Shown here: piece after piece, positions 7,981-36,002 of the stretch
How positions within the stretch are numbered: position 1 is the first letter of the stretch
Layout: each line of letters begins with the position of its first letter
DNA from: Dendrobates tinctorius
Lineage: Eukaryota
Assembly (NCBI RefSeq): GCF_039654945.1
Contig: NW_027361679.1
Span: forward strand, 101,742,001-101,806,000
Direction of reading: 5' to 3'
DNA length: 64,000 bases
Program-made: the position numbers and the translations under genes
Notes under the pieces: model-generated
Told to the model about the DNA's origin: nothing
Database searches by the model: none
The model's input: the letters and a program-made list of their open reading frames with translations, nothing else

Positions 7981-8096
7981 AGGGGAATTGAAACCCCAGT
8001 CTGCTTTGAAATCTGTGCCAAGGAGAGACCTTGCTGATGCAGCATAAATACAGATAAATGAACAGGAACATCATTTTAACCTGACACAATAACTTG

Positions 8097-9225
8097 CCGC
8101 AATGCCAGCCTCCCCTCACTCATGGAGCAGGTTCCAGACCTCCTGCTCCCTGGCCTTTTTCTTCCGGATGACATCCGCGACCCAAACGGAGGGTCTGGTG
8201 TAGGCCCCGGAGTCCAGTGGGCGGGACACAGCCAGGGTTGAGAGCGGGGCAGAGGCGGCCGTAGATGTCGGTGGCCCAGCAGCCGTTGGGGCCGGGCGGC
8301 GGATAGGGGCATCCGTGATTCCTGGCAGATGGGCCGCAGAGCCTGACAAGCAGGCCGCGGCCAACTCCGGTGGTGACGCATATGCGGCCGCGGGGCAGGC
8401 TGCAACCGGAGTCGCAGACAGGGCCGAAGCGGCGGCCGGCTTCAAGGGACAGGCCGCTGCTGGCAGGTGGAACGCAGCAGCGTCAGCCACGGACTGGCTC
8501 CGCACTGGCGACACTGGACGTGGCGCCGCCGGGCGGGGTGGCTCGGGGACGGGAGCAGGGGCATCGCTCAGCCCGGCGGAGGCCGCAGAGCCCTCCACAG
8601 CCGGGAATCCTGGAGCGCAGGAGGCCGCGCAGTGCGGCCGGATGGTGGGGGCCACTTGCGGAGCTGCCGGCAGAGCCGGGGGAACTCTCACCTTCCCCGG
8701 CGCCACGGTCTCCGACACGTCATCCCGCAACTCCTCCCTCAGCCTCCATTCTTCACCCCGCCGTCCGGCAGGGCCAGCCTCCGGGCTCGGGGATCCTGCA
8801 GGGAGGCTCCCCGGTGATGTATTCAGCGGCCGCTCCCGCGGGGTCCGCCGTCGCTCCTCTTCTCCGCCCGTAGTCTGGAGGACTGTCCGTGACTACAAGA
8901 AGCAGGTCTTCCAGCGAGACTCGATCTCCCGACGCGATTGCCACTCCAGGCGTCCGAGGCCATGGCAACTGCAGCGTCGCATCCCGTCCGGTGGGCAACA
9001 GTCGAATGGCGCGAAGCAGCCGCAGCCGACCTTCTCTCCCTGACCACTCCTGCTCCTGGGTGGGACGGTGGCCGACTTCTCCACCCAGTTGCCCGGGTCC
9101 AGTATGAGGGGTGGCGGCCTCCAGACACACCACTCCCCCCAGGGGTACATTGGAGGGGGCCACAGTCTGTCCAGAACGACTGTAAATGCCCAGGACTCTT
9201 CCCAGCGCTGAAGTACCACCGCCAT
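8097..9225 (-). pseudogene. LTR-element ORF copy A (Cys cluster plus Pro/Ala-rich region), truncated just before the cold-shock domain
   Basis: ATG at 9225 in AATATGG context. ORFs 8893..9321 and 8116..8730 are in the same frame, separated by a TAG where copy B has GAG. TGA at 8116 corresponds to AGA in copy B. Confidence 0.75.
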
Positions 9226-10165
9226 ATTGGACGGAATCTGGTGCCGCCCCGGATCGACTGATGGCAGCGATGATCCGGAACAACGTCCCCAATTTATAAT
9301 CCACCGGTGTTTGTAATCCACAGGTATTTGTAATCCACAGGGGAGCAGTCCAAGTCCTTCTAGTTTCTCCAGACGCAGGCCTGCCGCGGAAGGTGTCGTA
9401 TTAGCGGCGGCGAACCTGCCGACTACGCCAAATGTGGTAGGGGCCGGGGATGGGGGTTGGACCGCTGCTTACCAGACGAGGCAAAGACGAGACAGAGACA
9501 GAATCCAGTTGTAACAGTTCCAGGTTTATTTCGTCATCCTCCTGATGACCACTGTCACGCACCGCAGCCACTTTACAATTCTCTGTTTCTAGGCCCGGGT
9601 ACCTTTTCACCTTTCCCTTTAGTAGTGTTAGCGTCCCTCGTGGATCTTTCACTGGGGCTGTCCTAGACCAATCTACCGCCAGCGCTTCACCTGTCCGAGA
9701 TCGCCGTCCAGTCGGTACTCCCGGGGCCTCACTTGTTCTGCGGTACGTCACCTCGCCTGTCCTGCGATACGTCGTGTCAGGGCCACCCCCCTGACTGTCC
9801 TCTCCTGTCAGTCCCCTGGCCAAGCTTTCTCCGTTCTCTGTCTTCTGACTTCCTCTGCTAAGCTCCTCCCAGGACTGACCACTCTGGAACCCCAACCACT
9901 CCTACTTATCCCCTCTCTCACCGGGAATTCCCCTCCTGGGTTCCTATCTCCCCGCCCCCCATGACTGTGCGTTTCTCGAGCCATAAGCCGTTGTTAAGTC
10001 CAAAGCTACTCTCCATTGCCATCTTGTGGTCATTTCTCGGTACTGCACTCTCCTATCTCCCTTTCCTAGCTGTCACCCTTCTAACCTGTCAATCTCTGTC
10101 TCTAGTGCATAAACCGTCCCCGCCTACTACCAGTCAAGTCTGTCCGTCAAGTCACCTTCCCCACA
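8097..10165 (-). mobile_element. Non-autonomous LTR retroelement, copy A (5' LTR 9433-10165, PBS, ORF; 3' part deleted)
   Basis: LTR TGTGGGGAAGG...TACCACA on minus strand. PBS TGGCGTAGTCGGCAGG at 9415-9430. Same right flank (CCTGCTAAGAGGAGG) as copy B. Confidence 0.88.
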
Positions 10166-18060: not shown

Positions 18061-18174
18061 CGCTCAGCCTTGCCTCTTGGTGTCTGTAAGACTCTGCTGT
18101 GCTGTTGTCATGGTGCTGGATGAGGTAAGTATGTGTGGGGACAGGAGGGGTTTACAGGGTAGATGCAGCAGAGC

Positions 18175-19175
18175 TGTGTGTGTATGAGGTGTATGGAGAG
18201 GAGCCGTGTGTGTACGAGGTGTATGGAGCGGAGCCATGTGTGTACGAGGTGTACGGAACGGAGCCATGTGTGTACAAGGTGTACGGAGCGGAGCCGTGTA
18301 CGAGGTGTACGGAGCGGAGTCATGTGTGTACGAGGTGTATGGAGAGGAGCCGTGTGTGTATGAGGTGTACGGAACAGAGCCGCGTGTACGAGGTGTACGG
18401 AGCGGAGCCGTGTGTACGAGGTGTACGGAGCGGAGCCGCGCGTGTACGAGGTGTACGGAGCGGAGTCGTGTGTGTACGAGATGTATGGAGAGGAGCCATG
18501 GGTGTATGAGGTGTACAGAACAGAGCTGCGTGTACGAGATGTAGGGCGTAGCCGTGTGTACGAGGTGTATGGAGCGGAGCCAGGCGTGTACGAGGTGTAT
18601 GGAGCGGAGCCGCGCGTGTACCAGGTGTAAGGAGCGGAGCCGCGCGTGTACCAGGTGTACGGAGCGGAGCCGCGCGTGTACCAGGTGTACGGAGCGGAGC
18701 CGCGCATGTACCAGGTGTACGGAGCGGAGCCGCGCGTGTACGAGGTGTACGGAGCGGAGCCGTATTTGTACAAGGTGTATGGAGAGAAGCCATGTGTGTT
18801 TGAGGTGTACGGAACGGACACGCGCGTGTACGAGGTGTACGGAACGGAGCCGCGCGTAAGAGGTGTACGGAACGGAACCGCGCGTACAAGGTTACGGAGC
18901 GGAGCTGCGTGTACGAGGTGTACGGAGCGTAGCCGCCCGTGTACGAGGTGTACGGAGAGGAGCCGTGCGTGTACGAGGTGTATGGAGCGGAGTCATGTGT
19001 ACGAGGTTACGGAGCGGTGCCGCGTGTGTACGAGGTGTACGGAGTGGAGCCGTGTGTGTACTCGGTGTACGGAGCGGAGCCGCGTGTGTAAGGGGTATAC
19101 AGAGCGGAGCTGTGTGTACGGAGTGGAGCCATACGTGTACGGGATGTACGGAGCGGAGCCAAGTGTGTACGAAGC
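18175..19175. repeat. Minisatellite, ~30-bp unit GTGTGTACGAGGTGTACGGAGCGGAGCCGC
   Basis: Directly visible tandem array with 26-30 bp variants. Confidence 0.95.
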
Positions 19176-20740
19176 ATACAAAGTGGGCTTTTCCCACGGA
19201 CACAGGAGTACATGGCGGAGCCCCGAGGAGCATTTTAAAACACACACATGAAGTTCCACCTGAAGTGATGTGCTGGAAGCTGACCGGAAATGAGATAATT
19301 TCTTGAGGAGATTGTGAAAGAACCAGGAATGCTTCAGATCCATCACCGTGTCCTCCTCCGACAGCGCAGACAGCAGGATCGCCTTGGAATCGGGGATGCC
19401 GGCCATGTGAGCGGATCATGATATGTCCTGCACCGGGAGGCTCAGGTGGGCACTATAATGGGATCCGGGCTGCTATAGTATCTTTATAGAATCTTTCGTT
19501 ATTTCTTTTTCTCTTTTTCTTTATTTCTCTGTTCTTTCTTTCTCATTCTCTGTTCTGTCTTTCCCTCATTTTCTTTCTCTCTCTCTGTTCTTTNNNNNNN
19601 NNNNNNNNNNNNNNNNNNNNNNNNNNNNNNNNNNNNNNNNNNNNNNNNNNNNNNNNNNNNNNNNNNNNNNNNNNNNNNNNNNNNNNNNNNNNNNNNNNNN
19701 NNNNNNNNNNNNNNNNNNNNNTCTCTGATCTTTCTCTGTTCTTTCTTTCTTTCCCCTCTTTCTTTCCCTCTGTTCTTTCATCTTTCTCTCTCTGTTCTTT
19801 CTTTCTCGCTCTCCTTTCTTTCTCTCTCTTTTTTCTCTCTCTCTGTTTTCTCTCTTCCTTAGTGTCAGTCAGTGTGCCCATAATGCCAGCCACTGTGCCC
19901 TCAGTACCAGTCAGTGTGATCAGCAGTGCTAAATGGGTGCGATTAGGCGTGGACATGGGTGTGACTAGTTGCGAAATGGATGTGGCCGGGGCGTGGCCCA
20001 AATTTGCAGCGGAGCGTGCAGCGCGCCGCAGTCTTTGTCCCTCTTTCCCTTCTTCAAAAGTTGGGAGGTATGATAGGGGCAGCTATGACCAGGGGGTCTG
20101 CTTGCCCAATGGATAGCAGTTCTGCCAGGAATTCTGTCACCGTGTGTACAAAAGGGGACAGAGCTTTGGGAGGAGTACTGTACCTAAAAGCAATAAATAG
20201 GACTGAGCTGAAATACTGGGCACAGCTCTGACTACATGTTATATAGTCGTGTTAATCTCCTCTCACTTCTTGTAACCTACAAGTGTACAAAGATATTATA
20301 TAGTCACCATGTGACTAGTGGGCCTGTGTAACTTCAAATGCCAGGGCTGAATTTTAGTCCCAGTCCGGCCCTGATTACAATGGTATAAGTTGAACAGAGC
20401 AGGTCAGATATGACCTTGGTCAGATTTGACATCACTTGAAGTGACATCTTTAAAGTGATACATGAGAAATATACCAGAAATAGTCCAGAAATCGGTCAGA
20501 CGGTAAGACTAACCACTGCATTCCTACTTTACTTGCTCACATTTGCCATCACCGTTTTTGCTCCACTAATCTTCACTCTCCTTCGCTATCCCCAAACCCC
20601 TGCACCCTTGAACCAAATAACTATCTCCCCCTCTCTCTTACCCCCACCTCACTTTATCTGCAGACATACTCCTTAACCTCAGACCTCTCCTACTAAGATA
20701 CAATACAAGACGATCACTCTCCTTCACCTAACTGCTTTCC

Positions 20741-20791
20741 CTTTCTCTGCTTCTTCTCACTGCTGGTGACATATCCCCCAACCCTGGCCCC
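20741..20791 (+). other. 2A-like (StopGo) peptide upstream of the L2 endonuclease, LSLLLLTAGDISPNPGP
   Basis: Translation CTT TCT CTG CTT CTT CTC ACT GCT GGT GAC ATA TCC CCC AAC CCT GGC CCC; identical in copy B at 32821-32871. Confidence 0.8.
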
Positions 20792-22557
20792 CCCTGCCTC
20801 ATACATCCCACTAATCCTCACCCCTATCTTTCTCACACTAAGAGAAACTACCGCAATCCCTCAAACTTAAAACCTGTGCCACTGACCCCCTCCCTCCCGC
20901 ACCCTCTTTCTGGAGCACTTTGGAATGCTCGCTCCATCTGCAACAAGCTCCAGGTGATCCACAACCTCTTTACCTTTCCTTCCTGGCCCTCACTGAGACC
21001 TGGCTGACACCCCCTGACACGGCCTCCCCGGCCGCACTGAGTTATGGTGGCCTCCACTTTACCCACACTCCTCGCCCTGGCAACAGACATGGTGGAGGAG
21101 TGGGTTTCCTCCTTTCTAAAAACTGCTCCTTCAACCCTATCCAACCCCCACCCTCCCTTATCCTCCCTTCTTTTGAGGTTCACTCTGTCCGTATTTACTC
21201 TCCCTCTAATCTCCAAATGGCTGTCATATACCAACCACCGGGCTCAGCCACTGCCTTCATCAACCAATTCTCCATCTGGCTCCTCCACTTTCTCTCTTCT
21301 GACATCCCCACCATCATCATGAGGGACTTCAACATCCCCATTGACACCCACCAGCTAGCAGCCTCCAAATTACTGTCAATTACCTCATCCTTTGGACTTA
21401 CTCAGTGGTTATCCACAGCCACCCACACAGATGGACATACATTAGACCTCATCTTCACCCGCCTCTGTTCCCTATCTAATCTCGTAACCTCTCCCTTCCC
21501 CCTATCTGACCACCATCGACTCACCTTCTTATCCTTGTCCTTCTCACCTGCCCCCCATGTCCAGCCACTAGAACATCATCGCAGAAACCTCGCACACCTA
21601 GACATTCAGACTCTCAGACTCTCTTTTACCTCTGTTCTCCATATCTTCACTCCACAACACAGACAGTGCCACCGCTTTCTACAACGCCACCCTCACATCA
21701 GCCATAGACTCAGTCGTCCCTCTCATGCATGGCAAAGCGCAACAAACCAATAGACAACCCTGGCATAACAACCTCACCAAAATATTTTGACAAGCATCCA
21801 GGGTCGCGGAGGGGTGTTGGAAGAAAACACGCTTGCCAGATGACTTCACTGCTTTCAAACATGCTACACTTGCCTTTAAATCAGCCCTCACCTCTGCTAA
21901 ACAGACCTATTTCTCAAACCTTGTATCTTCATTATCCCACAACCCAAAACAACTGTTCAGCACATTTAACTCTCCTCCACCCACCACTGCCACCTCCAAC
22001 TACCCTCATCTCTGCTGAGGACTTTGTCACCTACTTCAAAAACAAGATCGACCAAACAAGGAAAACCTTTACAGTTCCACCACCCTAACCACTCCACATA
22101 CCAGACCTCTGCCCTTCCCTAATAACCTCCCTCTCCAACATCACTGAAGGAGAGCTTACTTATCTCCTTTCCAAATCACACCTCACCACCTGTGCACTTG
22201 ACCCCATCCTTTCCCACCTGCTCCTCAACCTCACTAACATGATCATTCCAGCTCTAACACATCTCTTCAACCTATTCCTAACTTCTGGTACCTTCCCCTC
22301 TGCCATCAAACATGCCACCATAACACCCATCCTCAAAAAATCAAACTCTGACCCAACTGCTATGCCCAGCTTTCGCCCAATATCACTGCTCCCGTTTGCT
22401 TCCAAACTCCTTGAACAGCATGTCCATGCTCAACTTTCCTCCCACCTCTCATCTAACTTCCTCCTTGACATCCTGCAATCTGGCTTCCGCCCCCACCACT
22501 CCACTGAAACTGCCCTGACCAAAATTACTAATGACTTACTCACAGTCAAAGCTAACA

Positions 22558-24211
22558 TAGAATCATAGAATCATAGAATCATAGAATCGTAGAGTTGGAA
22601 GGGACCTCCTGGGCCATCTGGTCCAACCCCCTGCTCAAAGCAGGATTCGCTAAATCATCCCAGTCAGATGTCTGTCCAGCCTCTGTTTGAAGACTTCCAT
22701 TGAAGGAGAACTCACCACTTCTCGTGGCAGCCTGTTCCACTCATTGATCACTCTAACTGTCAAAAAGTTTTTTCTAATATCTAATCTGTGTCTCCTCCCA
22801 TTCAGTTTCATCCCATTGCTTCTAGTCTTTCCTTGTGCAAATGAGAATAAAGTTGATCCTTCTACAATGTGACAGCCCTTTAGATATTTGTAGACAGCAA
22901 TTAAGTCTCCTCTCAGTCTTCTCTTTTGCAAACTAAACATTCCCAAATCCTGCAACCTTTCCTCATAAGACAGGGTTTGCAGACCGGTCACCATTCTGGT
23001 CGCTCTTTTCTGAACTTGCTCCAGTTTGTTGATGTGTTTTTTAAAATGTGGTGCCCAAAACTGGACACAATATTCCAGATGAGGTCTGACCAAAGAGGAG
23101 TAGAGGGAAATAATGACTTCACGTGATCTAGACTGTATGCTTCTGTTAATACATCCTAGAACTGCATTTGCCTTTTTTGCTGCTGCATCACACTGTTGAC
23201 TCATATTCAGTCTGTGATCTATTAGTATACCCAAGTCTTTTTCACATGTGCTGTCACTTAGCCCTATTCCTCCCATTCTATATATGCTTTTTTCATTTTT
23301 ATTGCCCAGATGTAGTACTTTGCATTTCTCCCTGTTAAAAACCATTCTGTTAGTTACTGCCCACTTCTCCAGTTTATTTAAATCTTTTTGAATCCTCTCT
23401 CTCTCTTCTCTAGTATTAGCTATCCCTCCTAGCTTTGTGTCATCAGCAAATTTAATCAGTTTACCCTCAATTCCTTCATCTAAATCGTTGATAAAGATGT
23501 TGAACAATACAGGGCCCAGGACAGAGCCCTGTGGTACCCCACTTGAGACATTCTTCCAACTGGATGTGCAGCCATTTACGACCACTCTTTGGGTCCGATC
23601 ACTAAGCCAGCTATGAATCCACCTAACAGTTGCCTTGTCCATTCCATACTTAGTCATTTTTTCAATAAGGATTGTATGAGAGACTTTGTCAAATGCTTTG
23701 CTGAAGTCAAGATATACTATATCTACAGCATTTCCTTGATCCACCCAATCAGTGATACCGTCATAGAAGGAAATTAAGTTAGTCTGACATGACTTATTAG
23801 TTACAAACCCATGCTGACTCTGTTTGATCACTTCATTCTTATCCAGGTATTGACTTACATGTTGTTTAATAATTTGTTCAAAGATCTTTCCTGGTATAGA
23901 AGTCAGACTCACCGGCCTATAGTTGCCTGGGTCCACCTTCTTCTCCTTTTTGAAGATAGGAACAACATTTGCTCTTCTCCAGTCTTCTGGCACTTCTCCT
24001 GTTCTCCAAGAATTTTCAAAGATTATGGAGAGTGGTTCAGAAATTTCTTCTGCTATCTCCTTCAGTACTCTGGGGTGTAATTCATCTGGACCTGGAGACT
24101 TGAATTCATTTAGGTTAGCTAAGTGTTTCCTCACTATCTTTCTGTTTATAGATATCCTGGATTCTTCTATTCCCTTAATAGGACAGTGAATAACAGTTGG
24201 TGTTACATTTC
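22558..24211 (-). mobile_element. CR1 LINE, 5'-truncated and young, inserted antisense into L2 copy A
   Basis: (ATTCTATG)n 3' tail at ~22556-22592. TSD CTAACA (22552-22557, 24212-24217). Empty site at ~34601. Confidence 0.93.
22650..24211 (-). CDS. CR1 ORF2 reverse-transcriptase portion, uninterrupted
   Basis: [70 protein letters not shown]; no internal stops. Confidence 0.92.
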
Positions 24212-27004
24212 CTAACAGACAGTTCTCCGTCCTCCTCCTTCTTGACCTGTAATCTGCCTTTGACACAGTTGACCACTGCCTACTGCTACAGATTCTTTCT
24301 TCCCTTGGCATCAAAGACCTTGCCCTGTCCTGGATTTCCTCATACCTTTCTGACTTCATGTTCAGCATTTCCCACTACCACACTACCTCCTTATAACACC
24401 CCCTCTCTGTTGGAGACCCCAAGGCTCTGTCCTGGGGCCCCTAGTTTTTTCCATCTATGCTCTTGGCCTAGGACAACTCATAAAGTCCCATGGCTTCCAG
24501 TACCATCTGTATGCAGATGACACTCAGATCTACCTCTCTGGCCCAGATGTCACCTCTCTACTGTCCAGAATCCAGGAGTGTCTATCAGCCATATCCTCCT
24601 TTTTCACCTCTCGCTTCCTAAAACTCAACGTAGACAAAACTGAACTCATTATCTTTCCTTCAACTCACGTATCTTCCCTACCTGATCTATCTATTATGGT
24701 AAACGGCATCACGCTCTCTCCCGCACCTGAAATCCGCTGCCTCGGAGTAACTTTCGACTCTGCCCTGTCCTTCAAACCACACGTCCAAACTCTTGCCACC
24801 TCCTGTCGCCTCCAACTCAAAAATATTTCCAGAATCCGTCCCTTCCTCAGCCCTCAATCTACTAAAACTCTTGTACATGCCCTCATCATCTCCCGCCTTG
24901 ACTACTGCAACACTCTCCTCTGTGGCCTCCCTGCTAACTCTCTTGCACCATTCCAGTTCCAGTCTATCCTTAATTCTGCTGTCTGACTAATCCACCTCTC
25001 TTCTCGCTACTCCCCTGTCTCTCCCCTCTGCAAATCCCTCCATTGGCTCCAAATTCCCCAACAAATCCAGTTCAAACTACTAACACTGACCTACAAAGCC
25101 ATCCACAACCTTTCCCCTCCCTATATCTCTGCACTAATCTCCCAATATCTTCCCTCACTTAATCTTCAAGCCTCCCAAGACCTCCTACTCTCCTCCACAC
25201 TTATTCCTTCCTCACACAACCGCTTCCAAGATTTCTCCCGAATATCCCCTATCCTCTGGAATGCCATGTCTCAACACGTCCGATTATCCACCACCCTCGG
25301 ATCCTTCAAACGGAACCTGAAAAACCATATTTTCAGGAAAGCTTACAGCCTGCAATAACCATTCTGCCGCCTCACCACCGCCTGAGCTGCCGCCTCATCA
25401 CCACCAGAGCTGCTGCACCCCGACCTTCTGTCTCTTCCCCACTATCCCGTAGAATGTAAGTCCGCAAGGAGAGGGTTCTCTCCCCTCTGTACCAGTCTGT
25501 CATTATAAATTTGTTTACTATTAACGATATCTATAACTTTGTATGTAACCCCCCTTCTCATGTTCAGCACCATGGAATTAATGGCGCTATATAAATAAAT
25601 AATAATAATTCTACCTCCCAAAAATCGGAATAGAAAGTGATCAAAAAATATCATGTGCCTGAAAATGGCACCAATCAATAAGTCAACTCGGGACACAAAA
25701 AAAGCTGTCACATGACTCTGTCGCCCAAAATATGGAAAAATAGTAGCTGTTTAAATATGGTGTTGCAAAAACTAGTTTTTGCAATAAAAAGCGTGTTTAG
25801 TGTGTATTCACACCAACCCGAAAAATAAGTTTTTCTAATCACTTATACCGCACGAGGAATGGCGGAAAGAAAACCAAAACTATTCTTCATCTGCTGTTGA
25901 TTTGTTCATTTATTCGCAGTAAAGCTCGGCTCACATTTATCCTTACACTGGGGTTTCTGTGTAAATCTCTGAAATATGTGATTCAGATGGACTCTCCTAT
26001 CTCCCTTTCCTAGCTGTCACCCTTCTAACCTGTCAATCTCCATCTCTAGTGCACAAACCGTCCCCGCCTACTACCAGTTAAGTCTGTCTGTCAAGTCACC
26101 TTCCCCACACTCCCCCTCCCTTTGTCCATTGTCGTCCCGACAATCGTACCACCTACCTACGTCGTTCTAAAGCTTGTCCACAGTCTGTTGTTGGACCGGT
26201 CGTTGGGCCACACCCACCACCCACGGGGGCCGCACCCAACCGGGAGCACCATGCTCCGAGCAGCCTACTGCTACTCGCCAGCGCGCACACCATGTGACAA
26301 CTTGCTTTCAGGTTGGCGAGGTCCACCCGGACTTATCTACGGCATGTACCTCCCACTGCTCTCCCCTTCTGTTACCTTCAGTTACCTGGAACGCCATGAC
26401 CGAGGCCTTTCGCCTAGCAGGTCACCATTGGCGCCCGCCTGTCCGTTTGGGGTGTCCGAGGTGTCGGGGACCTGACTGACGGACCACTGTCTGGTTCCTT
26501 GTTCTTCGTCACTTCATCCTTCACCTAAAAAGGAGTCATGGTCGGCATCTTAGTTACATCTACCTCGTACCCGGAACCTGTTACATGCACCTTTTTTTTT
26601 TTTTTTTTAAACATATTATTCACCAAATCAACTCTTAACATACGATTACTCTTACTTTAATAACATGAGGAGTTACTCAACTGGAGTAACCCCTTTTCCT
26701 CTCTCTCTCTTTTCCCAAAACATGTTAACATTCTTTTTCACAATACTTCCCATACAGCATCTTTAAAATAAAGACTCCCTTTAACATTAATACTCCCTCT
26801 TTCGCATCCCCACTATGTCAGGAAACACAAATTCAACAATATACAAAAACATTTTTTTCTTAACCTGGACGGAAAACTGTCCTCGTGGTCTGCACAACGG
26901 TGCAACGAAATCCCAACAGTCCAGGCCATCTCCTGATGGCCGGTAGCAAGGGGCCCCACCGCCGTGGAGCTCCTGGGATGCAGGGAGTGTCTCTATAGTC
27001 CTTT

Positions 27005-28294
27005 CTACGGGGGCTCGTGACCTTCGGGTTCAGCAATCACAGCTGCCGCGTAGTAGCGGCGGGGACAGTACTCTTTGTAGTACGACACCAAGTCCCCCTC
27101 TCGCAAAGCCCGGCCGTGACGGATGGAAGTCACATTAATATACACCTTTTGGCCGGTAGCGAGGTCTCGGATGAACCCGTATCCTTTTTGCAGGTTGGTG
27201 TACATGAGCCGTCCCATCGATCGTGAAGCCGCAATGCCAGCCTCCCCTCTCTCATGGAGCAGGTTCCAGATCTCCTGCTCCCTGGCCTTTTTCTTCCGGA
27301 TGACCTCCGCGACCCAAATGGAGGGTCCGGTGTAGGCCCTGGAGTCTGGTGGGCGGGACACAGCCAGGGTTGAGAGCGGGACAGAGGCGGCCGTAGATGT
27401 CGGCGGCCCAGCAGCCGCTGGGGCCGGGCAGCGGATAGGGGCATCCGTGATTCCTGACAGATGGGCTGAAGAGCCTGACAAGCAGGCCGCGGCCAACTCC
27501 GATGGTGACGCAGATGCGGACGCGGGACAGGCCGCAACCGGAGTCACAGATGGGGCCAAAGCGGCGGCTGACTTCAAGGGACAGGCCGCTGCAGGCAGGT
27601 GGAACGCAGCAGCATCGGCCGCGGACTGGCTTCGCACCGGCGATACCAGCCGCAGAGCCCTCCACAACCGGGATTCCTGGAGCGCAGGAGGCCGCGCGAT
27701 GCGGCCGGATGGTGGGGGCCGCTTGCTGAGCCGCCGGCAGAGCCAGGGGAACTCTCACCTTCCCCGGTGCCGCGGCCTCCGACACGTCATCCCGCGACTC
27801 CTTCCGCAGCCTCCATTCTTCACCCCGCCGTCTGGCAGGGCCAGCCTCCGGGCTTGGGGATCCCGCGGGGAGGCTCCCCAATGATGTCTTCAGCGGTCGC
27901 TCCTGTGGGGTCCGCTGTCGCTCCTCTTCTTCGCCCGTAGTCTGGAGGACTGTCCGTGACTCCAAGAAGCAGGTCTCCCAGCGAGACTCGATCTCCCGAC
28001 GCCATCGCCACTCCAGGCGTCCGAGGCCACGGCAACTGCAGCGTCGCATCCCGTCCGGTGGGAAACAGTCGAATGGCGCCAAGCAGCTGCAGTCGGCCTT
28101 CTTTCCCCGGCCACTCCCGCTCCTGGGTGGGACGGTGGCCGACTCCTCCACCCAGTTGCCCGGGTGTAGTATGGGGGGCGGTGGCCTCCATACACACACC
28201 GCTCCCCCCAGGGGTACGTTGGAGGGGGCCACAGTCCATCCAGAATGACTGCAAATGCCCAGGACTCTTCCCAGCGCTGAAGTATCACCGCCAT
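27005..28294 (-). pseudogene. LTR-element ORF with C-terminal cold-shock (OB-fold) domain at 27038-27217; two frameshifts in this copy
   Basis: GRLMYTNLQKGYGFIRDLATGQKVYINVTSIRHGRALREGDLVSY..YAAAV aligns by eye to the CSD pattern G.VKWFN..KGFGFI......DVFVH.SAI....L.EG..V.F..A.NV (RNP1 KGYGFI, RNP2-like VYIN). Confidence 0.8.
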
Positions 28295-28481
28295 ATTGGA
28301 TGGAATATGGTGCCGCCCCGGATCCTCTGATGGCAGCGATGATCCAGAACAACGTCCCCAATTTATAATCCACCGGTGTTTGTAATCCACAGGTATTTGT
28401 AATCCACAGGGGAGCAGTCCAAGTCCTTCTAGCTTCTCCAGACGCAGGCCTGCCGCGGATGGTGTCGTATTAGCGGCGGCG

Positions 28482-28499
28482 ATCCTGCCGACTACGCCA
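28482..28499 (-). promoter_or_regulatory. Primer-binding site complementary to tRNA-Ser 3' end
   Basis: TGGCGTAGTCGGCAGGAT, 2 nt downstream of the LTR end; complement of vertebrate tRNA-Ser ...AUCCUGCCGACUACGCCA. Confidence 0.9.
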
Positions 28500-29946
28500 A
28501 ATGTGGTAGGGGATGGGGGGTGGACCGCTGCTTACCAGACGAGGCAAAGACGAGACGGAGACAGAATCCAGGTGTAATAGTTCCAGGTTTATTTCGTCGT
28601 CCTCCTGATGACCACTGTCACGCACCGCAGCCACTTTACAATTCTCTGTTTCTAGGCCTGGGTACCTTTTCACCTTTCCCTTTAGTCGTGTTGGCGTCCC
28701 TCGTGGATCTTTCACTGGGGCTGTCCTAGACCAATCTACCGCCAGCGCTTCCCCTGTCCGAGGTCGCCGTCCAGTCGGTACTCCCGGGGCCTCACTTGTT
28801 CTGCGGTACGTCACCTCGCCTGTCCTGAGATACGTCATGTCAGGGCCACCCCCCTGACTGTCCTCTCCTGTCAGTCCCCTGGCCAAGCTTTCTCTGTTCT
28901 CTGTCTTCTGTCTTCCTCTGCTAAGCTCCTCCCAGGACTGACCACTCTGGAACCCCAACCACTCCTACTTATCCCCTCTCTCACCGGGAATTCCCCTCCT
29001 GGGTTCCTATCTCCCCGCCCCCCATGACTGTGCGTTTCTCGAGCCATAAGCCGTTGTTAAGTCCAAAGCTACTCTCCCCTGCCATCTTGTGGTCATTTCT
29101 CGGTACTGCACTCTCCTATCTCCCTTTCCTAGCTGTCACCCTTCTAACCTGTCAATCTCCGACTCTAGTGCACAAACCGTCCCCGCCTACTACTAGTCAA
29201 GTCTGTCCGTCAAGTCACCTTCCCCACACCTGCTAAGAGGAGGAGCTGACACACCTCCTTCCCTGCCTGATAGCTGCTCCTCTAATGCCCTGCAGTACAG
29301 AAGCATTGCAAGTATCAGATCAGTGATCTGTTACTATACAGTGATGTCCCATCCAGGGACAATGTAAAAAAGTTTAAAAAAATAGTTATTACAAAATATA
29401 AAAAACTTATATAAAGAACAAAAATAAGGAAAAAATGTTATTACAATAATTACATTTATTTATGTAAAACGTGCACAGATTTGGTATCGTCGCTTTTGGA
29501 ACGTTCCAACCTGTAAACTGTCCCACTAGTTAACCCTTTCAGTGAACACCGTAAAAAATAGGCAAAAAAATATGCTTAATAATCATATTGCTGAATCGAA
29601 AGTGCAATAAAACACGATCAGAAAGACGACTATAAATAAAAATGGCAACGCTGAAAACTGTCTTGTCCCGCAAAAAACAAGTCCCCACAAAGTTCAGTCA
29701 GCAGAAAAATAAAAAAGTTATAGCTCTCAGAATAAATCAATGTAAAAATAATTATATTTTCTATAAAATAGTTTTTATTGTGTACTGTAAAAGTGCCAAA
29801 ACATAAAAAAACATGATATTAATGAGGTATCGCTATAATCATACTGACCTGAAGAATAAAGCTGCCTTATTGATATTACCACACTCAGAATGGTATAAAA
29901 AAAAAAATTCCTAAATTGCTGGTTTTTGTTCATTCTACATTTGAAT

Positions 29947-32422
29947 CAGGCCCTGATTGGTAATATAACCAACCGGGAATTTTCCCGCTGGGCCGCTGTC
30001 ATGTGGGCCGCTGGTGGCAGCACCTGCTCATCTGGTCGCGCGCCTGCTCATCTGGCCGCTTGCCAGCTGATGCGGCCACTGGCCTGGCTGTTGCTCCTGC
30101 CGCCGGCCCTCTGCGGGCACGGCGGTTATAGTTTCCAACCCTCCCGCACTGCAGGGAGATAAGCTGCCACACCCCCCCCACACACCCCATCCTCGCCGTA
30201 GCATGAGACCTCCCCCCCAGCCACTCACAGCGTCGCTTGCCTGCTCTCGTCTCTGTTCACAGGACCTGTGATGAGGTCACAGGAGGGGAGGAGTCAGGGG
30301 TCACATGATCAGAAGCCTTTGTCCAGACCCCTGATCATGTGACCCCTGACTCCGTCCCTCCTGTGACCTCATCACAGGTCCTGTGCACTCAGCCTTGCCT
30401 CTTGGTGTCTGCAAGACTCTGCTGTGCAGTTGTCATGGTGCTGGATGAGGCAAGTATGTGTGGGGTCAGGAGGGGTTTACAGGGTAGATGTAGCAGAGCT
30501 GTGTGTGTATGAGGTGTACGGAGTTGAGCCGTGTGTGTACGAGGTGTACGGAGCGGAGCCGTGTGTCTACGAGATGTACGGAGTGGAGCCGTGTGTCTAC
30601 GAGATGTACGGAGCGGAGCCGTGTGTGTACGAGGTGTACGGAGCGGAGCAGTGTGTGTACGAGGTGTACGGAGCGGAGCCGCGCGTGTACGAGGTGTACG
30701 GAGAGGAGCCGCACGTGTACGAGGTGTACGGAGAGGAGCCCCGTGTGTACGAGGTGTACGGAGAGGAGCCGTGTGTGTATGAGGTGTACGGAGAGGAGCC
30801 GTATGTGTACGAGGTGTATGGAGAGGAGCCGTGCTTGTACGAGGTGTATGAAGAGGAGCCGCGCGTGTACGAGGTGTACGGAGAGGAGTCGTGCATGTAC
30901 GAGGTGTATGGAGAGGAGCCGCGCGTGTGCGAGGTGTACGGAGCGGAGCCGCACATGTACGAGGTGTACGGAGAGGAGCCGTGCGTGTACGAGGTGTATG
31001 GAGCGGTGCCGTGTGTACGAGGTGTACGGAGCGGTGTCGTGTGTACGAGGTGTACGGAGCGGAGCCGTGTGTGTACTTGGCGTACGGAGCGGAGCCGCGT
31101 GTGTATGGGGTATACAGAGCGGAGCCGTGTGTACGGAGTGGAGCCATATGTGTACGGGATGTACGGAGCGGAGCTAAGTGTGTACGGAGCGGAGCTAAGT
31201 GTGTACGAAGCATACAAAGCGGGCTTTTCCCACGGACACAGGAGTACATGGCGGAGCCCCGAGGAGCATTTTAAAACACACACATGACGTTCCACCTGAA
31301 GTGATGTGCTGGAAGCTGACCAGAAATTAGATAATTTCTTGAGGAGATTGTGACAGAACCAGGAATTCTTCAGATCAATCACCATGTCCTCCTCCGACAG
31401 CGCAGACAGCAGGATCGCCTTGGAATCGGGGATGCCGGCCATGTGAGCGGATCATGATATGTCCTGCACCGGGAGGCTCAGGTGGGCACTATAATGGGAG
31501 CCGGGCTGCTATAGTATCTTTATAGAATCTTTCGTTATTTCTTTCTCTCTTTTTCTTTCTTTCTCTGTTCTTTCTTTCTCATTCTCTGTTCTGCCTTTCC
31601 CTCATTTTCTTTCTCTCTCTTTGTTCTTTNNNNNNNNNNNNNNNNNNNNNNNNNNNNNNNNNNNNNNNNNNNNNNNNNNNNNNNNNNNNNNNNNNNNNNN
31701 NNNNNNNNNNNNNNNNNNNNNNNNNNNNNNNNNNNNNNNNNNNNNNNNNNNNNNNNNNNNNNNNNNNNNNNCTGTTCTTTCTTTCTTTCCCCTCTTTCTT
31801 TCTCTCTCTGTTCTTTCTTCTTTCTCTCTCTGTTCTTTCTTTCTCTCTCGCTCTCCTTTCTTTCTCTCTCTTTTTTCTTTTTTCTCTCTCTCTGTTTTCT
31901 CTCTTCCTTAGTGCCAGTCAGTGTGCCCATAATGCCAGCCACTGTGCCCTCAGCACCAGTCAGTGTGATCAGCAGTGCTAAATGGGTGCGATTAGGCGTG
32001 GACATGGGTGTGACTAATTGCGAAATGGATGTGGCCGGGGCATGGCCCAAATTTGCAGCGGAGCGCGCAGCGCGCCGCAGTCTTTGTCCCTCTTTTCCTT
32101 CTTCAAAAGTTGGGAGGTATGATAGGGGCAGCTATGACCAGGGGGTCTGGTTGCCCAATGGATAGCAGTTCTGCCAGGAATTCTGTCACCGTGTGTACAA
32201 AAGGGGACAGAGCTTTGGGAGGAGTACTGTACCTAAAAGCAATAAATAGGACTGAGCTGAAATACTGGGCACAGCTCTGACTACATGTTATATAGTCGTG
32301 TTAATCTCCTCTCACTTCTTGCAACCTACAAGTGTACAAAGATATTATATAGTCACCATGTGACTAGTGGGCCTGTGTAACTTTAAATGCCAGGGCTGAA
32401 TTTTAGTCCCAGTCCGGCCCTG
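29947..32422. mobile_element. Non-autonomous hAT with minisatellite, copy B
   Basis: TIRs CAGGCCCTGATTGG / CCAGTCCGGCCCTG. Perfect 8-bp TSD ATTTGAAT (29939-29946, 32423-32430). Confidence 0.88.
30500..31210. repeat. 30-bp minisatellite, copy B
   Basis: Exact 30-bp periodicity GAGGTGTACGGAGAGGAGCCGTGTGTGTAC over 30541-31010. Confidence 0.95.
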
Positions 32423-32599
32423 ATTTGAATGGTATAAGTTGAACAGAGCAGGTCAGATATGACCTTGGTCAGATTTGACATCACTTGAAGTGACAACTTT
32501 AAAGTGATACCTGAGAAATATACCAGAAATAGTCCAGAAATCAGTCAGACGGTAAGACTAACCACTGCTTTCCTTCTTTACTTGCGTTTTTTTTAACCC

Positions 32600-35500
32600 T
32601 GCTCTTTAACCATGCTCACATTTGCCATCACCGTTTTTGCTCCACTAATCTTCACTCTCCTTCGCTATCACCAAACCCCTGCACCCTTGAACCAAATAAC
32701 TATCTCCCCCTCTCTCTTACCCCCCCCCTCACTTTATCTGCAGACATACTCCTTAACCTCAGACCTCTCCTATTAAGATACAATACAAGACGATCACTCT
32801 CCTTCACCCACCTGCTTTCCCTTTCTCTGCTTCTTCTCACTGCTGGTGACATATCCCCCAACCCTGGCCCCCCCTGCCTCATACATCCCACTAATCCTCA
32901 CCCCTATCTTTCTCACACTAAGAGAAACTACCGCAATCCCTCAAACTTAAAACCTGTGCCTCTGACTCCCTCCCTCCCAAACCCTCTTTCTGGAGCACTT
33001 TGGAATGCTCGCTCCATCTGCAACAAGCTCCACGTGATCCACAACCTTTTTACCTCCCGCAACCTTTCCTTCCTGGCCCTCACTGAGACCTGGCTGACAC
33101 CCCCTGACACGGCCTCCCCAGCCGCACTGAGTTATGGGGGCCTCCACTTTACCCACATTCCTCGCCCTGGCAACAGACATGGTGGAGGAGTGGGTTTCCT
33201 CCTTTCTAAAAACTGCTCCTTCAACCCTATCCAACCCCCACCCTCCCTTATCCTCCCTTCTTTCGAGGTTCACTCTGTCCGTATTTACGCTCCCTCTAAT
33301 CTCCAAATGGCAATCATATACCAACCACCGGGCTCAGCCACTGCCTTCATCGACCAATTCTCCATCTGGCTCCTCCACTTTCTCTCTTCTGACATCCCCA
33401 CCATCATCATGAGGGACTTCAACATTCCCAATGACACCCACCAGCCAGCAGCTTCCAAATTACTGTTACTTACCTCATCCTTTGGACTTACTCATTGGTC
33501 CTCCACAGCCACCCACACAGATGGACATACATTAGACCTCATCTTCACCCGCCTCTGTTCCCTATCTAATCTCACAACCTCTCCCTTCCCCCTATCTGAC
33601 CACCATCTACTCACCTTCTCATCCTTGTCCTTCTCACCTGCCCCCCATGTCCAGCCACTAGAACATCATCACAGAAACCTCACACACCTAGACATTCACA
33701 GACTCTCAGACTCTCTTCTACCTCTGTCCTCCATATCTTCACTCCACAGCACAGACAGTGCCGCCGCTTTCTACAACGCCACCCTCACATCAGCCATAGA
33801 TTCAGTCGCCCCTCTCATGCATGGCAAAGTGCGACAAACCAATAGGCAACCCTGACATAATAACCTCACCAAAAAACTTCGACAAGCATCCAGGGTCGCA
33901 GAGCGGCGTTGGAAGAAAACACGCCTGCCTGAAGACTTCACTACTTTCAAACAAGCTACACTTGCCTTTAAATCAGCCCTCACCTCTGCTAAACAGACCT
34001 ATTTCACAAACCTTGTATCTTCATTATCCCACAACCCAAAACAACTGTTCAGCACTTTTAACTCTCTCCTCCGCCCACCTACTTCAAAAACAAGATCGAC
34101 CAAACAAGGAAAACCTTTACAGTTCCACCACCCTAACCACTCCACATACCAGACCTCTGCCCTTCCCTAATAACCTCCCTCTCCAACATCACTGAAGGAG
34201 AGCTTACTCATCTCCTTTCCAAATCACACCTCACCACCTGTGCACTTGACCCCATCCCTTCCCACCTGCTCCCCAACCTCACTATCATGATCATTCCAGC
34301 CCTAACCCATCTCTTCAACCTATTCCTAACTTCTGGTACCTTCCCCTCTGCCATCAAACATGCCACCATAACACCCATCCTCAAAAACATCAAACTTTGA
34401 CCCAACTGCTATGCCCAGCTTTCGCCCCATATCACTGCTCCCGTTTGCTTCCAAACTCCTTGAACAGCATGTTCATGCTCAACTTTCCTCCCACCTCTCA
34501 TCTAATTTCCTCCTTGACATCCTGCAATCTGGCTTCCGCCCCCACCACTCCACTGAAACTGCCCTGACCAAAATTACTAATGACTTACTCACAGCCAAAG
34601 CTATCAGACAGTTCTCCATCCTCCTCCTTCTTGACCTGTAATCTGTCTTTGACACAGTTGACCACTGCCTACTGCTACAGATTCTTTCTTCCCTTGGCAT
34701 CAAAGACCTTGCCCTGTCCTGGATTTCCTCATACCTTTCTGACTTCATATTCAGCGTTTCCCACTCCCACACTACCTCCTCATAACGCCCCCTCTCTATT
34801 GGAGACCCCAAGGCTCTGTCCTGGGGCCCCTACTTTTTTCCATCTGTACTCTTGGCCTAGGACAACTCATAAAGTCCCATGGCTTCCAGTACCACCTGTA
34901 TGCAGATGACACTCAGATGTACCTCTCTGGCCCAGATGTCACCTCTCTGCAGTCCAGAATCCCAGAGTGTCTATCAGCCATATCCTCCTTTTTCACCTCT
35001 CGCTTCCTAAAACTCAATGTAGACAAAACTGAACTCATTATCTTTCCTCCATCTCACGTATCTTCCCTACCCGATCTATCTATTATGGTAAATGGCATCA
35101 CACTCTCCTGCACCTGAAATGCGCTGCCTCGGAGTAACTCTCGACTCTGTCCTGTCCTTCAAACCACACGTCCAAACTCTTGCCACCTCCTGTAGCCTCC
35201 AACTCAAAAATATTTCCAGAATCCGTCCCTTCCTCAGCCCTCAATCTACTAAAACTCTTGTACATGCCCTCATCATCTCCCACCTTGACTACTGCAACAC
35301 TCTCCTCTGTGGCCTACCTGCTAACTCTCTTGCACCACTCCAGTTCCAGTCTATCCTTAATTCTGCTGCCTGACTAATCCACCTCTCTCCTCGCTACTCC
35401 CTTGTCTCTCCCCTCTGCAAATCCCTCCATTGGCTCCCAATTCCCCAACAAATCCAGTTCAAACTACTAACACTGACCTACAAAGCCATCCACAACCTTT

Positions 35501-35952
35501 CCCCTCCCTATATCTCTGAACTAATCTCCCAATATCTTCCCTCACGTAATCTTCGATCCTCCCAAGACCTCCTACTCTCCTCCACACTAATTCCTTCCTC
35601 ACACAACTGCCTCCAAGATTTCACCCGAATATCCCCTATCCTCTGGAATGCCATGTCTCAACACGTCCGATTATCCACCACCCTCGGATCCTTCAAACGG
35701 AACCTGAAAAACCATATTTTCAGGAAAGCTTACAGTCTGCAATAACCATTCTGCCGCCTGAGCTGCCGCCTCATCACCACCAGAGCTGCTGCACCCCCGA
35801 CCTTCTGTCTCTTCCCCACTATCCCGTAGAATGTAAGGCCGCAAGTACAGGGTCCTCTCCCCTCTGAACCAGTCTGTCATTATAAATTTGTTTACTGTTA
35901 ACGATATCTATACCTTTGTATGTAACCCCCCTTCTCATGTACAGCACCATGA
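32600..35952 (+). mobile_element. L2-clade LINE copy B, degraded, tail deleted
   Basis: ATG at 32612, 2A-like motif at 32821-32871, EN ORF 32956..33855, RT fragments 34411..35373. Confidence 0.92.
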
Positions 35953-36002
35953 GTGCTTACACTGGGGTTTCTGTGTAAATCTCTGAAATATGTGATTCAG
36001 AT

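What the first reader, a model, noticed from the sequence alone, without database searches (positions are those of the whole stretch)
25991..29228. gag/pol-less LTR retroelement encoding a cold-shock-domain protein
Seen: all LTR-retrotransposon cis signals (727-bp TGTGG..CCACA LTR, 18-nt tRNA-Ser PBS, PPT abutting a second LTR) around only ~2.4 kb of internal sequence with no PR/RT/RNase H/IN motif. The single sense-strand ORF ends in GRLMYTNLQKGYGFIRDLATGQKVYINVTSIRHGRALREGDLVSYYKEYCPRRYYAAAV (27038-27217), which follows the cold-shock domain pattern. Established: CSDs (bacterial CspA, Y-box/FRGY2, Lin28, CSDE1) bind ssRNA/ssDNA and act as RNA chaperones; Y-box proteins package amphibian oocyte mRNA. 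Inference: a satellite-like LTR element mobilised in trans that brings its own RNA-binding protein (nucleocapsid substitute, packaging competitor, RNA masking or anti-silencing factor). I do not know of a description of this architecture, but have not been able to search.
Basis: partly seen in the sequence, partly recalled or inferred. Interest (0 to 1): 0.9.

Follow-up and report, generated by a model that had tools for sequence, protein, structure and literature searches.

The report
Frog LTR element carrying a cold-shock gene
A dead copy of a small retrovirus-like mobile element from a frog genome has lost all the usual retroviral genes. Its one gene encodes an RNA-binding cold-shock-domain protein. 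An intact copy with the same layout sits in the poison-dart frog Dendrobates tinctorius, so this is a real, selected family and not a one-off wreck.

Summary
On the minus strand there is a 727-bp TG..CA LTR (28502-29228), an 18/18 tRNA-Ser primer-binding site, about 2.4 kb of internal sequence with no gag, PR, RT, RNase H, IN or env match, a polypurine tract and the start of a second LTR.

The gene is a roughly 430-codon ORF ending in a genuine cold-shock domain. The sequence scores are sub-threshold but consistent, and the predicted five-stranded barrel matches CspA and YB-1.

Corrections:
- This copy is a pseudogene with two frameshifts.
- Its 3' LTR is only a ~120-nt stump, because a tandem segmental duplication broke there.
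- The second copy (8096-10165) comes from that duplication, not from transposition.

New evidence:
- The only relative among 1.84 billion cluster representatives is an intact 431-aa "uncharacterized protein" of Dendrobates tinctorius.
- It lies in an element of identical architecture, at a non-orthologous site, with a 4-bp target duplication.
- Between the two species the CSD region shows strong purifying selection (omega about 0.05-0.13).
- A 131-nt block just after the stop codon is 95% identical.

The best reading is a non-autonomous, helper-dependent ERV-like family with one selected CSD gene. What the protein does is inferred. CSD capture by bird ERVs was described in 2025, so this is a new variant of a known kind. 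Copy number and the helper element could not be checked.

The parts
28502..29228 (-). 5' LTR, 727 bp, TGTGG...CCACA. It has AATAAA about 85 nt before its end and a degenerate TATA-like ATAAGTA opposite the TATAAAT of the Dendrobates copy.
   Evidence: It is homologous to the L001 5' LTR, 9028-9803.
28482..28499 (-). Primer-binding site TGGCGTAGTCGGCAGGAT (tRNA-Ser 3' end with CCA), separated from the LTR by a TT spacer (28500-28501).
   Evidence: Sequence. It is kept 17/18 in copy 1 and 17/18 in L001. The tRNA-Ser identity is from knowledge.
28295..28481 (-). Leader. It holds three tandem ~16-nt repeats YNGTGGATTAYAAA at 28361-28410 and has no upstream ATG in this copy.
   Evidence: The same three repeats occur in L001 at about 9885-9945.
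27005..28294 (-). The element's only gene, about 430 codons when compared with the intact Dendrobates protein. Here it is a pseudogene. Relative to copy 1 it has 2 extra nt at about 28198-28199 and a 65-nt gap between 27650 and 27649. The stop is TAG at 27005-27007. A PPxY motif lies at codons 24-27, and a Cys-rich motif GCxCxAPFDCxPPDGMRRCxCxGxGRLEW at about codons 70-100. The middle is Pro/Ala/Ser-rich, probably disordered.
27023..27319 (-). Basic helix (WVAEVIRKKKAREQEIWNLLHE) followed by the cold-shock domain. RNP1 is KGYGFI; RNP2 is degenerate (VYINV).
   Evidence: Omega is 0.05-0.13 against the Dendrobates copy.
26862..26992 (-). Ultra-conserved 131-nt block immediately after the stop codon, 125/131 identical to the Dendrobates copy. 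It is a candidate cis-acting element of unknown function.
   Evidence: Binomial p is 3e-8 to 4e-10 against a 75-78% background. No Rfam family matched. The folding z-score is only -1.5.
26592..26608 (-). A17 tract at the end of an AT-rich, 3'-UTR-like stretch, 396 nt after the stop.
   Evidence: The equivalent site in L001 is only A-rich (AAAGTAAAA).
26124..26476 (-). Conserved non-coding 3' internal region (78% identical to L001 11807-12174). It ends in a small hairpin ATTGTCG..CGACAAT just before the PPT.
26110..26123 (-). Polypurine tract AAAGGGAGGGGGAG abutting the 3' LTR.
   Evidence: AAAGGAAGGGGGAG in L001.
25990..26109 (-). 3' LTR stump: the first ~120 nt of the LTR, cut by the left breakpoint of a tandem segmental duplication.
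   Evidence: D7 (95% to 29107-29229). In one search, 25942-25989 is identical to 35956-36003, the end of the duplicated unit.
8096..10165 (-). Paralogous copy 1, produced by the segmental duplication. It has an LTR at 9433-10165, a PBS at 9413-9430, and the ORF from ATG 9225 in one frame with in-frame stops at codons 111 (8893-8895) and 370 (8116-8118). It is cut off at 8096, so its CSD and 3' part are lost.

Best explanation
The window holds a dead copy of a non-autonomous, retrovirus-like LTR element family of hyloid frogs. A local tandem duplication has doubled it.

The family keeps the cis signals needed for reverse transcription and integration:
- LTRs with TG..CA ends
- a tRNA-Ser PBS
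- a PPT
- a 4-bp target duplication, as in class I ERVs

It has no gag, pol or env. In their place is a single gene for a roughly 430-aa protein. That protein has a largely disordered N-terminal two thirds, with a conserved PPxY motif and a Cys-rich motif, then a basic helix and a C-terminal cold-shock domain.

Shown:
- the architecture
- its presence at independent sites in two species
- the CSD fold
- purifying selection on the CSD
- neutral decay of the two copies in the window

Inferred:
- The element is copied by the Gag-Pol of an unidentified autonomous relative.
- The CSD protein acts on RNA in the element's own interest. Most plausibly it binds or chaperones the element's transcript, with the ultra-conserved 131-nt block after the stop codon or the leader repeats as candidate sites, for stability, export or packaging into the helper's particles.

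Origin: the CSD gene was most likely acquired long ago as an accessory or transduced gene of an ERV, as seen in bird ERVs.

The confidence of 0.6 is for the family-level reading (a non-autonomous LTR family with a selected CSD gene). The specific RNA-packaging or chaperone role alone I would put at about 0.3.
For: - Cis signals and absence of retroviral domains.
- CSD: Pfam E=9.1e-5. PDB phmmer gives Csp/YB-1 matches with E from 1e-4. A profile of the two family members aligns end to end with CspB. The AF2 model has pLDDT 86-92 over the barrel core, and Foldseek top hits are all CSDs.
- Only close relative in 1.84e9 cluster representatives: P0003, 431 aa, E=7.5e-57, Dendrobates tinctorius XP_073436531.1.
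- Its locus L001 has the same LTR-PBS(Ser)-leader repeats-ORF-conserved block-3' region-PPT-LTR order, a TSD of TCTG/TCTG, and no collinear flank homology to the window. The insertions are therefore independent.
- Selection between species: omega 0.13 over codons 326-426 and 0.05 over the CSD (p about 5e-9); omega 0.45-0.6 elsewhere (p about 0.005-0.01).
- Copy 1 against copy 2 gives omega 0.68, not significantly different from 1. Their lesions are not shared, so the ORF was open over the shared 376 codons when the locus duplicated.
Against: - Only two independent loci are known. Copy number, insertion polymorphism and expression are unknown.
- No autonomous partner was found or could be sought.
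- Only one intact annotated protein exists in the whole protein collection. That fits a single host-retained gene as well as a family that annotation pipelines mask.
- The Pfam score is below the curated cut-off. The Dendrobates protein has a degenerate RNP1 (REYGLI), so nucleic-acid binding is not assured.
- The structure model used an alignment that included bona fide CSDs, which biases it toward that fold.
- The N-terminal 330 residues gave no usable model (pLDDT 36).
- The 131-nt block shows no significant RNA structure.
Confidence: 0.6

Rival explanations
1. Deletion derivative of a full-length ERV that carries the CSD gene as an accessory gene, like the bird ERVs with CSD or the epsilonretroviral accessory ORFs. 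The gag/pol-less form is a defective variant that was co-propagated by its own parent, and the CSD serves the parent virus. This overlaps with the best explanation rather than excluding it.
For: Bird ERVs of two major groups carry CSDs alongside RT (PMC12287698). An epsilon-like ERV with 147 copies is reported in D. tinctorius (PMC12690878). The 4-bp TSD fits class I ERVs. The 3' internal region and LTRs look retroviral.
Against: The same gag/pol-less junctions are present in two species whose copies differ by about 25-30%, so the short form has itself been the replicating lineage for a long time. No pol-bearing relative is at hand. No retroviral hit appeared in BFVD or IMG/VR.
Confidence: 0.3
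2. One-off LTR-mediated retrocopy or transduction. A cellular mRNA for a CSD protein was copied into an LTR element by template switching. It is a passenger with no role for the element.
For: The ORF is intronless. It is followed by an AT-rich, 3'-UTR-like stretch ending in an A17 tract 396 nt after the stop, and retroelement sequence resumes after that. This chimeric structure is what Tan et al. 2016 describe (PMC5131818).
Against: No parental gene was found. Outside the CSD, nothing in 1.84e9 representatives resembles the protein except the Dendrobates element copy. The A tract is not conserved in L001, so it may be a local expansion. The chimera then transposed as a unit (TSD, two species) and its CSD stayed under selection.
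Confidence: 0.2
3. The selection is host-level. The Dendrobates locus is a domesticated, LTR-driven host gene, and the window copy is an unrelated decayed sibling.
For: The Dendrobates ORF is intact although its element is no longer transposition-competent: the 3' LTR has a roughly 490-nt internal deletion and the LTRs are about 3% diverged. It is the only annotated intact protein of its kind.
Against: At that age an intact ORF is not improbable by chance; I estimate about 0.2-0.35 from the lesion rate seen in the window copies. The loci are non-orthologous. The ancestor they share was an element, so most of the selection measured acted on a transposing lineage.
Confidence: 0.15
4. The CSD resemblance is a chance pattern in a junk ORF.
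For: Both Pfam scores are below the gathering threshold (22.7 and 19.5 bits against 27).
Against: Two diverged family members each hit CSD independently. The match covers the full domain length against CspB. The model has five strands, and Foldseek hits are exclusively CSDs, with 41 PDB hits at E<=1e-3. There is strong purifying selection.
Confidence: 0.03

Closest known systems
Avian endogenous retroviruses with captured cold-shock domains (Mol Biol Evol 2025, PMC12287698)
   Same: A Pfam PF00313-type CSD is encoded inside an LTR-bounded retroviral element. The authors argue that repeated, convergent capture suggests a benefit to the virus.
   Different: The bird ERVs were found and classified by their RT, so they still carry pol, and the CSD sits at varying positions. 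Here gag, pol and env are all absent and the CSD gene is the only gene. The host is a frog. Sequence relatedness of the CSDs could not be tested because the bird sequences are not at hand.
Replication-defective transducing retroviruses and LTR-mediated retrocopies (Tan et al. 2016, PMC5131818)
   Same: A non-viral ORF replaces the viral genes between intact cis signals. An A-rich tract lies at the 3' end of the insert. The element depends on a helper.
   Different: No parental host gene is detectable. The chimera is old, is shared by two species and is selected. It is not a young single-locus retrocopy.
Non-autonomous LTR elements (plant LARD/TRIM; mouse ETn with MusD, VL30, MaLR with MERVL)
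   Same: LTR, PBS and PPT are retained. Their own gag-pol is lost. They are copied in trans by an autonomous relative.
   Different: Those elements are non-coding inside or carry decayed remnants. This family keeps a selected protein-coding gene of non-retroviral type.
Epsilonretroviral accessory genes (for example the walleye dermal sarcoma virus rv-cyclin); from my own knowledge
   Same: A class I retrovirus lineage of lower vertebrates that has acquired host-type genes. An epsilon-like ERV is reported in D. tinctorius (PMC12690878).
   Different: Those viruses are complete, and their accessory genes lie 3' of env. No link between this element and an epsilonretrovirus has been shown.
Retroelement nucleic-acid chaperones (retroviral NC zinc knuckles, LINE-1 ORF1p); functional analogy only
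   Same: A small ssRNA-binding module encoded by the element itself. It is preceded here by a PPxY motif like the late domains of some Gag proteins.
   Different: The fold is unrelated (an OB barrel, not a CCHC knuckle or RRM). No capsid-like domain is present. The function is untested.

Membership tests
LTR retroelement (structural definition) | Two direct long terminal repeats with TG..CA termini | tested here: met
   The 727-bp 5' LTR reads TGTGG..CCACA. The 3' LTR is present only as a ~120-nt stump, 95% identical. Both LTRs are present in the Dendrobates copy.
LTR retroelement (structural definition) | tRNA primer-binding site 0-3 nt after the 5' LTR, and a polypurine tract abutting the 3' LTR | tested here: met
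   The PBS is 18/18 to the tRNA-Ser 3' end (tRNA sequence from knowledge) after a TT spacer. The PPT is AAAGGGAGGGGGAG. Both are kept in copy 1 and L001.
LTR retroelement (structural definition) | Target-site duplication | tested here: inconclusive
   It cannot be read in the window because the 3' end was lost at the duplication breakpoint. It is met in the Dendrobates copy: TCTG on both sides.
Non-autonomous LTR element | No gag, PR, RT, RNase H or IN coding capacity | tested here: met
   No Pfam retroviral domain in any ORF on either strand at E<=0.1-1, nor in P0003.
Non-autonomous LTR element | An autonomous partner sharing LTR ends, PBS and packaging region | not testable with these tools
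   No eukaryotic genome can be searched by DNA here. The viral and metagenome scans were empty.
Non-autonomous LTR element | Multiple independent insertions (evidence of mobility) | tested here: met
   Two non-orthologous loci in two frog genomes, with different target sites (CAGG-side flank against TCTG) and no collinear flanks. The two copies in the window are not independent.
Cold-shock domain, Pfam PF00313 | Profile score at or above the curated gathering threshold (27 bits) | tested here: not met
   22.7 bits, E=9.1e-5 for the window. 16.1-19.5 bits, E=0.01 to 9e-4 for P0003.
Cold-shock domain, Pfam PF00313 | Five-stranded antiparallel beta-barrel (OB fold) of about 65-70 residues | tested here: met
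   The AF2 model has strands 33-42, 47-52, 58-67, 77-84 and 90-95. Foldseek gives CspA TM 0.81 and rmsd 1.7 A, and YB-1 CSD TM 0.77. Caveat: the input alignment contained known CSDs.
Cold-shock domain, Pfam PF00313 | RNP1 (K/N-G-F/Y-G-F-I) and RNP2 (V-F-V-H-F) nucleic-acid-binding motifs | tested here: inconclusive
   RNP1 is canonical in the window copy (KGYGFI) but REYGLI in Dendrobates. RNP2 is VYINV/VYVNV, lacking the His and the last aromatic residue.
LTR-mediated retrocopy or transduced host gene | An identifiable parental host gene | tested here: not met
   phmmer of the 220-aa C-terminal part against 1.84e9 representatives, and a word-based search with the whole of P0003, found only P0003 outside generic CSD hits.
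LTR-mediated retrocopy or transduced host gene | A poly(A) remnant at the 3' junction between insert and element | tested here: inconclusive
   An A17 tract at 26592-26608 is followed by resumed element sequence. The tract is not conserved in L001.
Class I (gamma/epsilon-like) ERV | Pol/RT phylogeny | not testable with these tools
   The element has no pol. Only the 4-bp TSD points to class I.
Avian ERV-CSD group (PMC12287698) | CSD homologous to those of the bird ERVs | not tested
   The bird sequences and supplements are not held.

The most novel reading that the evidence does not exclude
The family is a protein-coding 'satellite' of a frog retrovirus. It is a gag-less LTR element that supplies its own RNA-binding adaptor. 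The CSD protein recognises the element's RNA, through the 131-nt block or the leader repeats. Through its PPxY and Cys-rich N-terminus it links that RNA to the helper's particles or to the budding machinery. This would make an OB-fold protein a functional stand-in for nucleocapsid.
Probability: 0.2. Interest if true: 0.85.

Novelty: new variant of a known kind. Interest (0 to 1): 0.6.

Why it matters
Non-autonomous LTR elements are usually thought of as non-coding hitch-hikers. Captured host genes in retroviruses are usually seen as short-lived passengers.

Here a minimal LTR element keeps exactly one non-retroviral gene, an RNA-binding cold-shock protein. It has kept that gene under selection across two frog lineages.

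Together with the repeated CSD capture recently reported in bird ERVs, this points to a recurrent advantage of CSD proteins for retroelements, perhaps in RNA stability, export, packaging or escape from silencing. It also gives a compact, natural system in which to test that idea: one gene, one conserved RNA block and a known intact allele in D. tinctorius.

Tried and rejected
**Searches for more relatives**
- Word-based protein searches with the 220-aa ORF, with the whole Dendrobates protein and with the 104-aa C-terminus found no further relatives.
- Scans of IMG/VR and JGI metagenome contigs with the C-terminal alignment were empty. So was an exact 28-nt search with the conserved block.
- An exact-sequence look-up of the window ORF in the contig index found nothing, so the source species stays unidentified.

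**Characterising the protein and the conserved block**
- Folding the whole 431-aa protein gave pLDDT 36, which is uninformative. The N-terminal domain remains uncharacterised.
- PDB, Pfam and NCBIfam searches of the N-terminal part found nothing.
- Rfam over the element found no family.
- RNA folding of the conserved block gave z about -1.5 and one compensatory pair. I do not claim a structure.
- Stop-codon readthrough into the conserved block was considered. The frame stays open for 57 codons after TAA in Dendrobates. It is not supported, because the window copy has a different stop, an indel and a second stop, and the few substitutions show no coding pattern.

**Readings rejected**
- The two window copies are not two transpositions. 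They share flanks as part of a tandem duplication.
- The 'Ago_hook' and 'ORF20A' Pfam hits lie in out-of-frame or LTR ORFs and are sub-threshold.
- The best non-family CSD hits are marine protist multi-CSD proteins. They say nothing about origin.

Full report
**1. What is there**

The finding lies on the minus strand. Reading 5' to 3' on that strand:
- a 727-bp LTR at 29228->28502 with TGTGG...CCACA ends
- a TT spacer
- the 18-nt site TGGCGTAGTCGGCAGGAT (28499->28482)
- a 187-nt leader with three tandem ~16-nt repeats
- an ORF region from ATG 28294 to TAG 27005
- about 880 nt of non-coding sequence
- the polypurine tract AAAGGGAGGGGGAG (26123->26110)
- the first ~120 nt of a second LTR (26109->25990, 95% identical to the first, family D7)

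The 18-nt site is the exact complement of the vertebrate tRNA-Ser 3' end with CCA. That tRNA sequence is from my own knowledge; no tRNA gene occurs in the window or in L001.

No ORF on either strand of the element matches a retroviral Pfam domain. A precise PBS, a PPT and LTR ends in the right order and spacing are far beyond chance.

**2. The gene**

Comparison with a second copy in the window (8096-10165) shows what the ancestral gene was. It began at the ATG (28294 here, 9225 in copy 1) and ran in one frame for about 430 codons.
- Relative to copy 1, the copy of the finding has two extra bases at about 28198-28199 and a 65-nt gap at 27650/27649. The frame is therefore lost and regained.
- Copy 1 keeps one frame but has in-frame stops at codons 111 and 370. 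It is cut off at 8096, before the CSD.
- None of the lesions is shared.

Both copies are pseudogenes. Compared with each other they give omega 0.68, not significantly different from neutrality.

**3. The cold-shock domain is real**
- Pfam CSD gives E=9.1e-5 and 22.7 bits, below the curated 27 bits.
- phmmer against PDB finds only cold-shock and Y-box proteins from E=1e-4.
- A two-sequence family profile aligns with residues 6-64 of the 66-residue CspB.
- An AlphaFold model of the last 104 residues shows one helix followed by five strands, with pLDDT 86-92 over the core of the barrel.
- Its Foldseek matches in the PDB are CspA, CRHSP-24, Bc-Csp, YB-1, YBX2, Unr and Lin28 CSDs. The TM score to target is up to 0.81, with rmsd 1.7 A.

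Caveats: the model's alignment contained bona fide CSDs. RNP1 is canonical here (KGYGFI). RNP2 (VYINV) lacks the usual His and the last aromatic residue.

**4. The second copy in the window is not a second transposition**

Self-comparison shows a tandem segmental duplication, with unit A at 8096-25989 and unit B at 25990-36003. Positions 25942-25989 are identical to 35956-36003, which is the end of the unit. The left breakpoint of the duplication therefore falls inside the element's 3' LTR, and this explains the stump. Unit A later received LINE insertions and lost the element's 3' 1.2 kb.

**5. A relative elsewhere**

A full HMMER pass over 1.84 billion cluster representatives found one close relative (E=7.5e-57). 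All other hits were generic CSD proteins, mostly multi-CSD proteins of marine protists. The relative is the 431-aa XP_073436531.1, 'uncharacterized protein' of Dendrobates tinctorius.

Its gene is intronless and lies in an intron of a SLAIN-family gene. The locus has the same architecture throughout:
- a ~776-bp LTR reading TGTAGGG...CCCTACA
- a CT spacer
- the PBS TGGCGTAGTCGGCACGAT
- three leader repeats
- the intact ORF
- the same 3' regions
- the PPT AAAGGAAGGGGGAG
- a 3' LTR with an internal deletion
- a 4-bp target duplication, TCTG on both sides

Outside the element, the window and this locus share only scattered repeats, not collinear flanks, and their target sites differ. They are independent insertions of one family. 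The gag/pol-less form is therefore the unit that transposed, not a private deletion.

**6. Selection**

Nei-Gojobori estimates between the Dendrobates gene and the window copies, taken frame by frame with breaks excluded:

| Region (codons) | omega | dN | One-sided p |
|---|---|---|---|
| 326-426 | 0.13 | 0.18 | 2e-9 |
| 362-426 (CSD) | 0.05 | 0.17 | 5e-9 |
| 1-97 | 0.45 | 0.30 | 0.009 |
| 98-325 (low-complexity middle) | 0.59 | 0.43 | 0.005 |

Over codons 326-426 dS is near saturation. The alignment of the middle region is uncertain. Part of the divergence is neutral decay in the window lineage, so the constraint on the active lineage was stronger than these numbers show.

Motifs conserved in all three copies are a PPxY (PPTY or PPMY) at codons 24-27, the Cys-rich GCxCxAPFDCxPPDGMRRCxCxGxGRLEW, and APGKVRVP.

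**7. Non-coding conservation**

The 131 nt right after the stop codon (26992->26862) are 125/131 identical between the two species. This exceeds any part of the coding sequence (p 3e-8 to 4e-10).
- No Rfam family matches.
- Predicted folding is not significantly better than for shuffled sequences.
- I record it as a candidate cis-acting element of unknown kind.

The last 350 nt before the PPT are 78% identical.

Between the two conserved parts lies a poorly conserved AT-rich stretch. In the window it ends in an A17 tract (26608->26592). This looks like a 3' UTR plus poly(A) of a captured mRNA. The Dendrobates copy has only AAAGTAAAA there, so the tract may be a local expansion.

**8. Explanation**

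The best-supported reading is a non-autonomous, helper-dependent ERV-like element family whose only gene is a selected CSD protein.
- Shown: the architecture, independent insertions, the fold, selection, and decay of the window copies.
- Inferred: mobilisation in trans by an unidentified autonomous relative, and an RNA-directed role of the protein in the element's own cycle.

The rivals are described in the Rival explanations section with their weights:
- a deletion derivative of a complete ERV that carries the CSD as an accessory gene (this overlaps with the best reading)
- a passenger retrocopy
- a domesticated host gene in Dendrobates

**9. Comparison with what is known**
- CSD capture by ERVs has been described. 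A 2025 survey of 758 bird genomes found 46 ERVs encoding PF00313 domains, in two major ERV groups, at varying positions and acquired several times. The authors read this as convergent and possibly adaptive (PMC12287698). Those elements still carry RT.
- LTR-flanked chimeric retrocopies formed by template switching are known across animals (PMC5131818).
- Non-autonomous LTR elements such as MaLR with MERVL are known (same paper), but they are non-coding.
- I found no description of a gag/pol/env-less LTR element maintained with a CSD gene, and none for amphibians. Dfam and Repbase could not be consulted.

**10. Limits**
- No frog genome could be searched by DNA, so copy number, the helper element, expression and the identity of the source species remain open.
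Broken copies were compared piece by piece.
- Nothing in the window was taken for human sequence.

Noticed in passing
window 8096-25989 and 25990-36003: Tandem segmental duplication, 94-95% identical. Its left breakpoint lies inside the element's 3' LTR. Unit A is twice as long as unit B because of later insertions.
   Followed up: yes
window 12959-17039 and 22650-24368 (minus strand): LINE-type ORFs (endonuclease/exonuclease/phosphatase plus RVT_1) inserted into unit A of the duplication. Related endonuclease fragments lie at 20920-21753 and 32956-33855.
   Followed up: partly
window 26862-26992 (minus strand); L001 11312-11443: A 131-nt block directly after the stop codon is 95% identical between two frog species while synonymous sites are near saturation. 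No Rfam match and no significant predicted structure.
   Followed up: partly
window 28361-28410 (minus strand); L001 about 9885-9945: Three tandem ~16-nt repeats (YNGTGGATTAYAAA) in the leader between PBS and ATG. Their number and sequence are conserved in both species.
   Followed up: no
window 27753-27761 (minus strand); L001 about 10505-10515: A conserved AAG|GTGAGA, resembling a 5' splice site, sits inside the ORF in its most conserved nucleotide stretch (51/60 identical).
   Followed up: no
window 18100-19170 and 30385-31220: Arrays of a 30-nt minisatellite (GTGTACGGAGCGGAGCCGTGTGTGTACGAG-like), present in both units of the duplication. They create long spurious ORFs in several frames.
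   Followed up: no
window 30255-30388: A 58-nt inverted repeat, 95% complementary, with an 18-nt loop, just upstream of the minisatellite.
   Followed up: no
window 36001-36453 and 47776-49354: Further tandem-repeat arrays, the second about 1.5 kb long and GC-skewed.
   Followed up: no
L001 9028-12456 (Dendrobates tinctorius JAYMGB010000017.1): The intact element copy sits in an intron of a SLAIN-domain gene. Its 3' LTR has a roughly 490-nt internal deletion between short GGGGA repeats, yet the 431-codon ORF is intact.
   Followed up: partly
window 19594-19721, 31630-31771, 50721-50954, 50963-51284: Runs of N (assembly gaps or masked). They were left untouched. The first two lie at equivalent positions in the two duplication units.
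   Followed up: no
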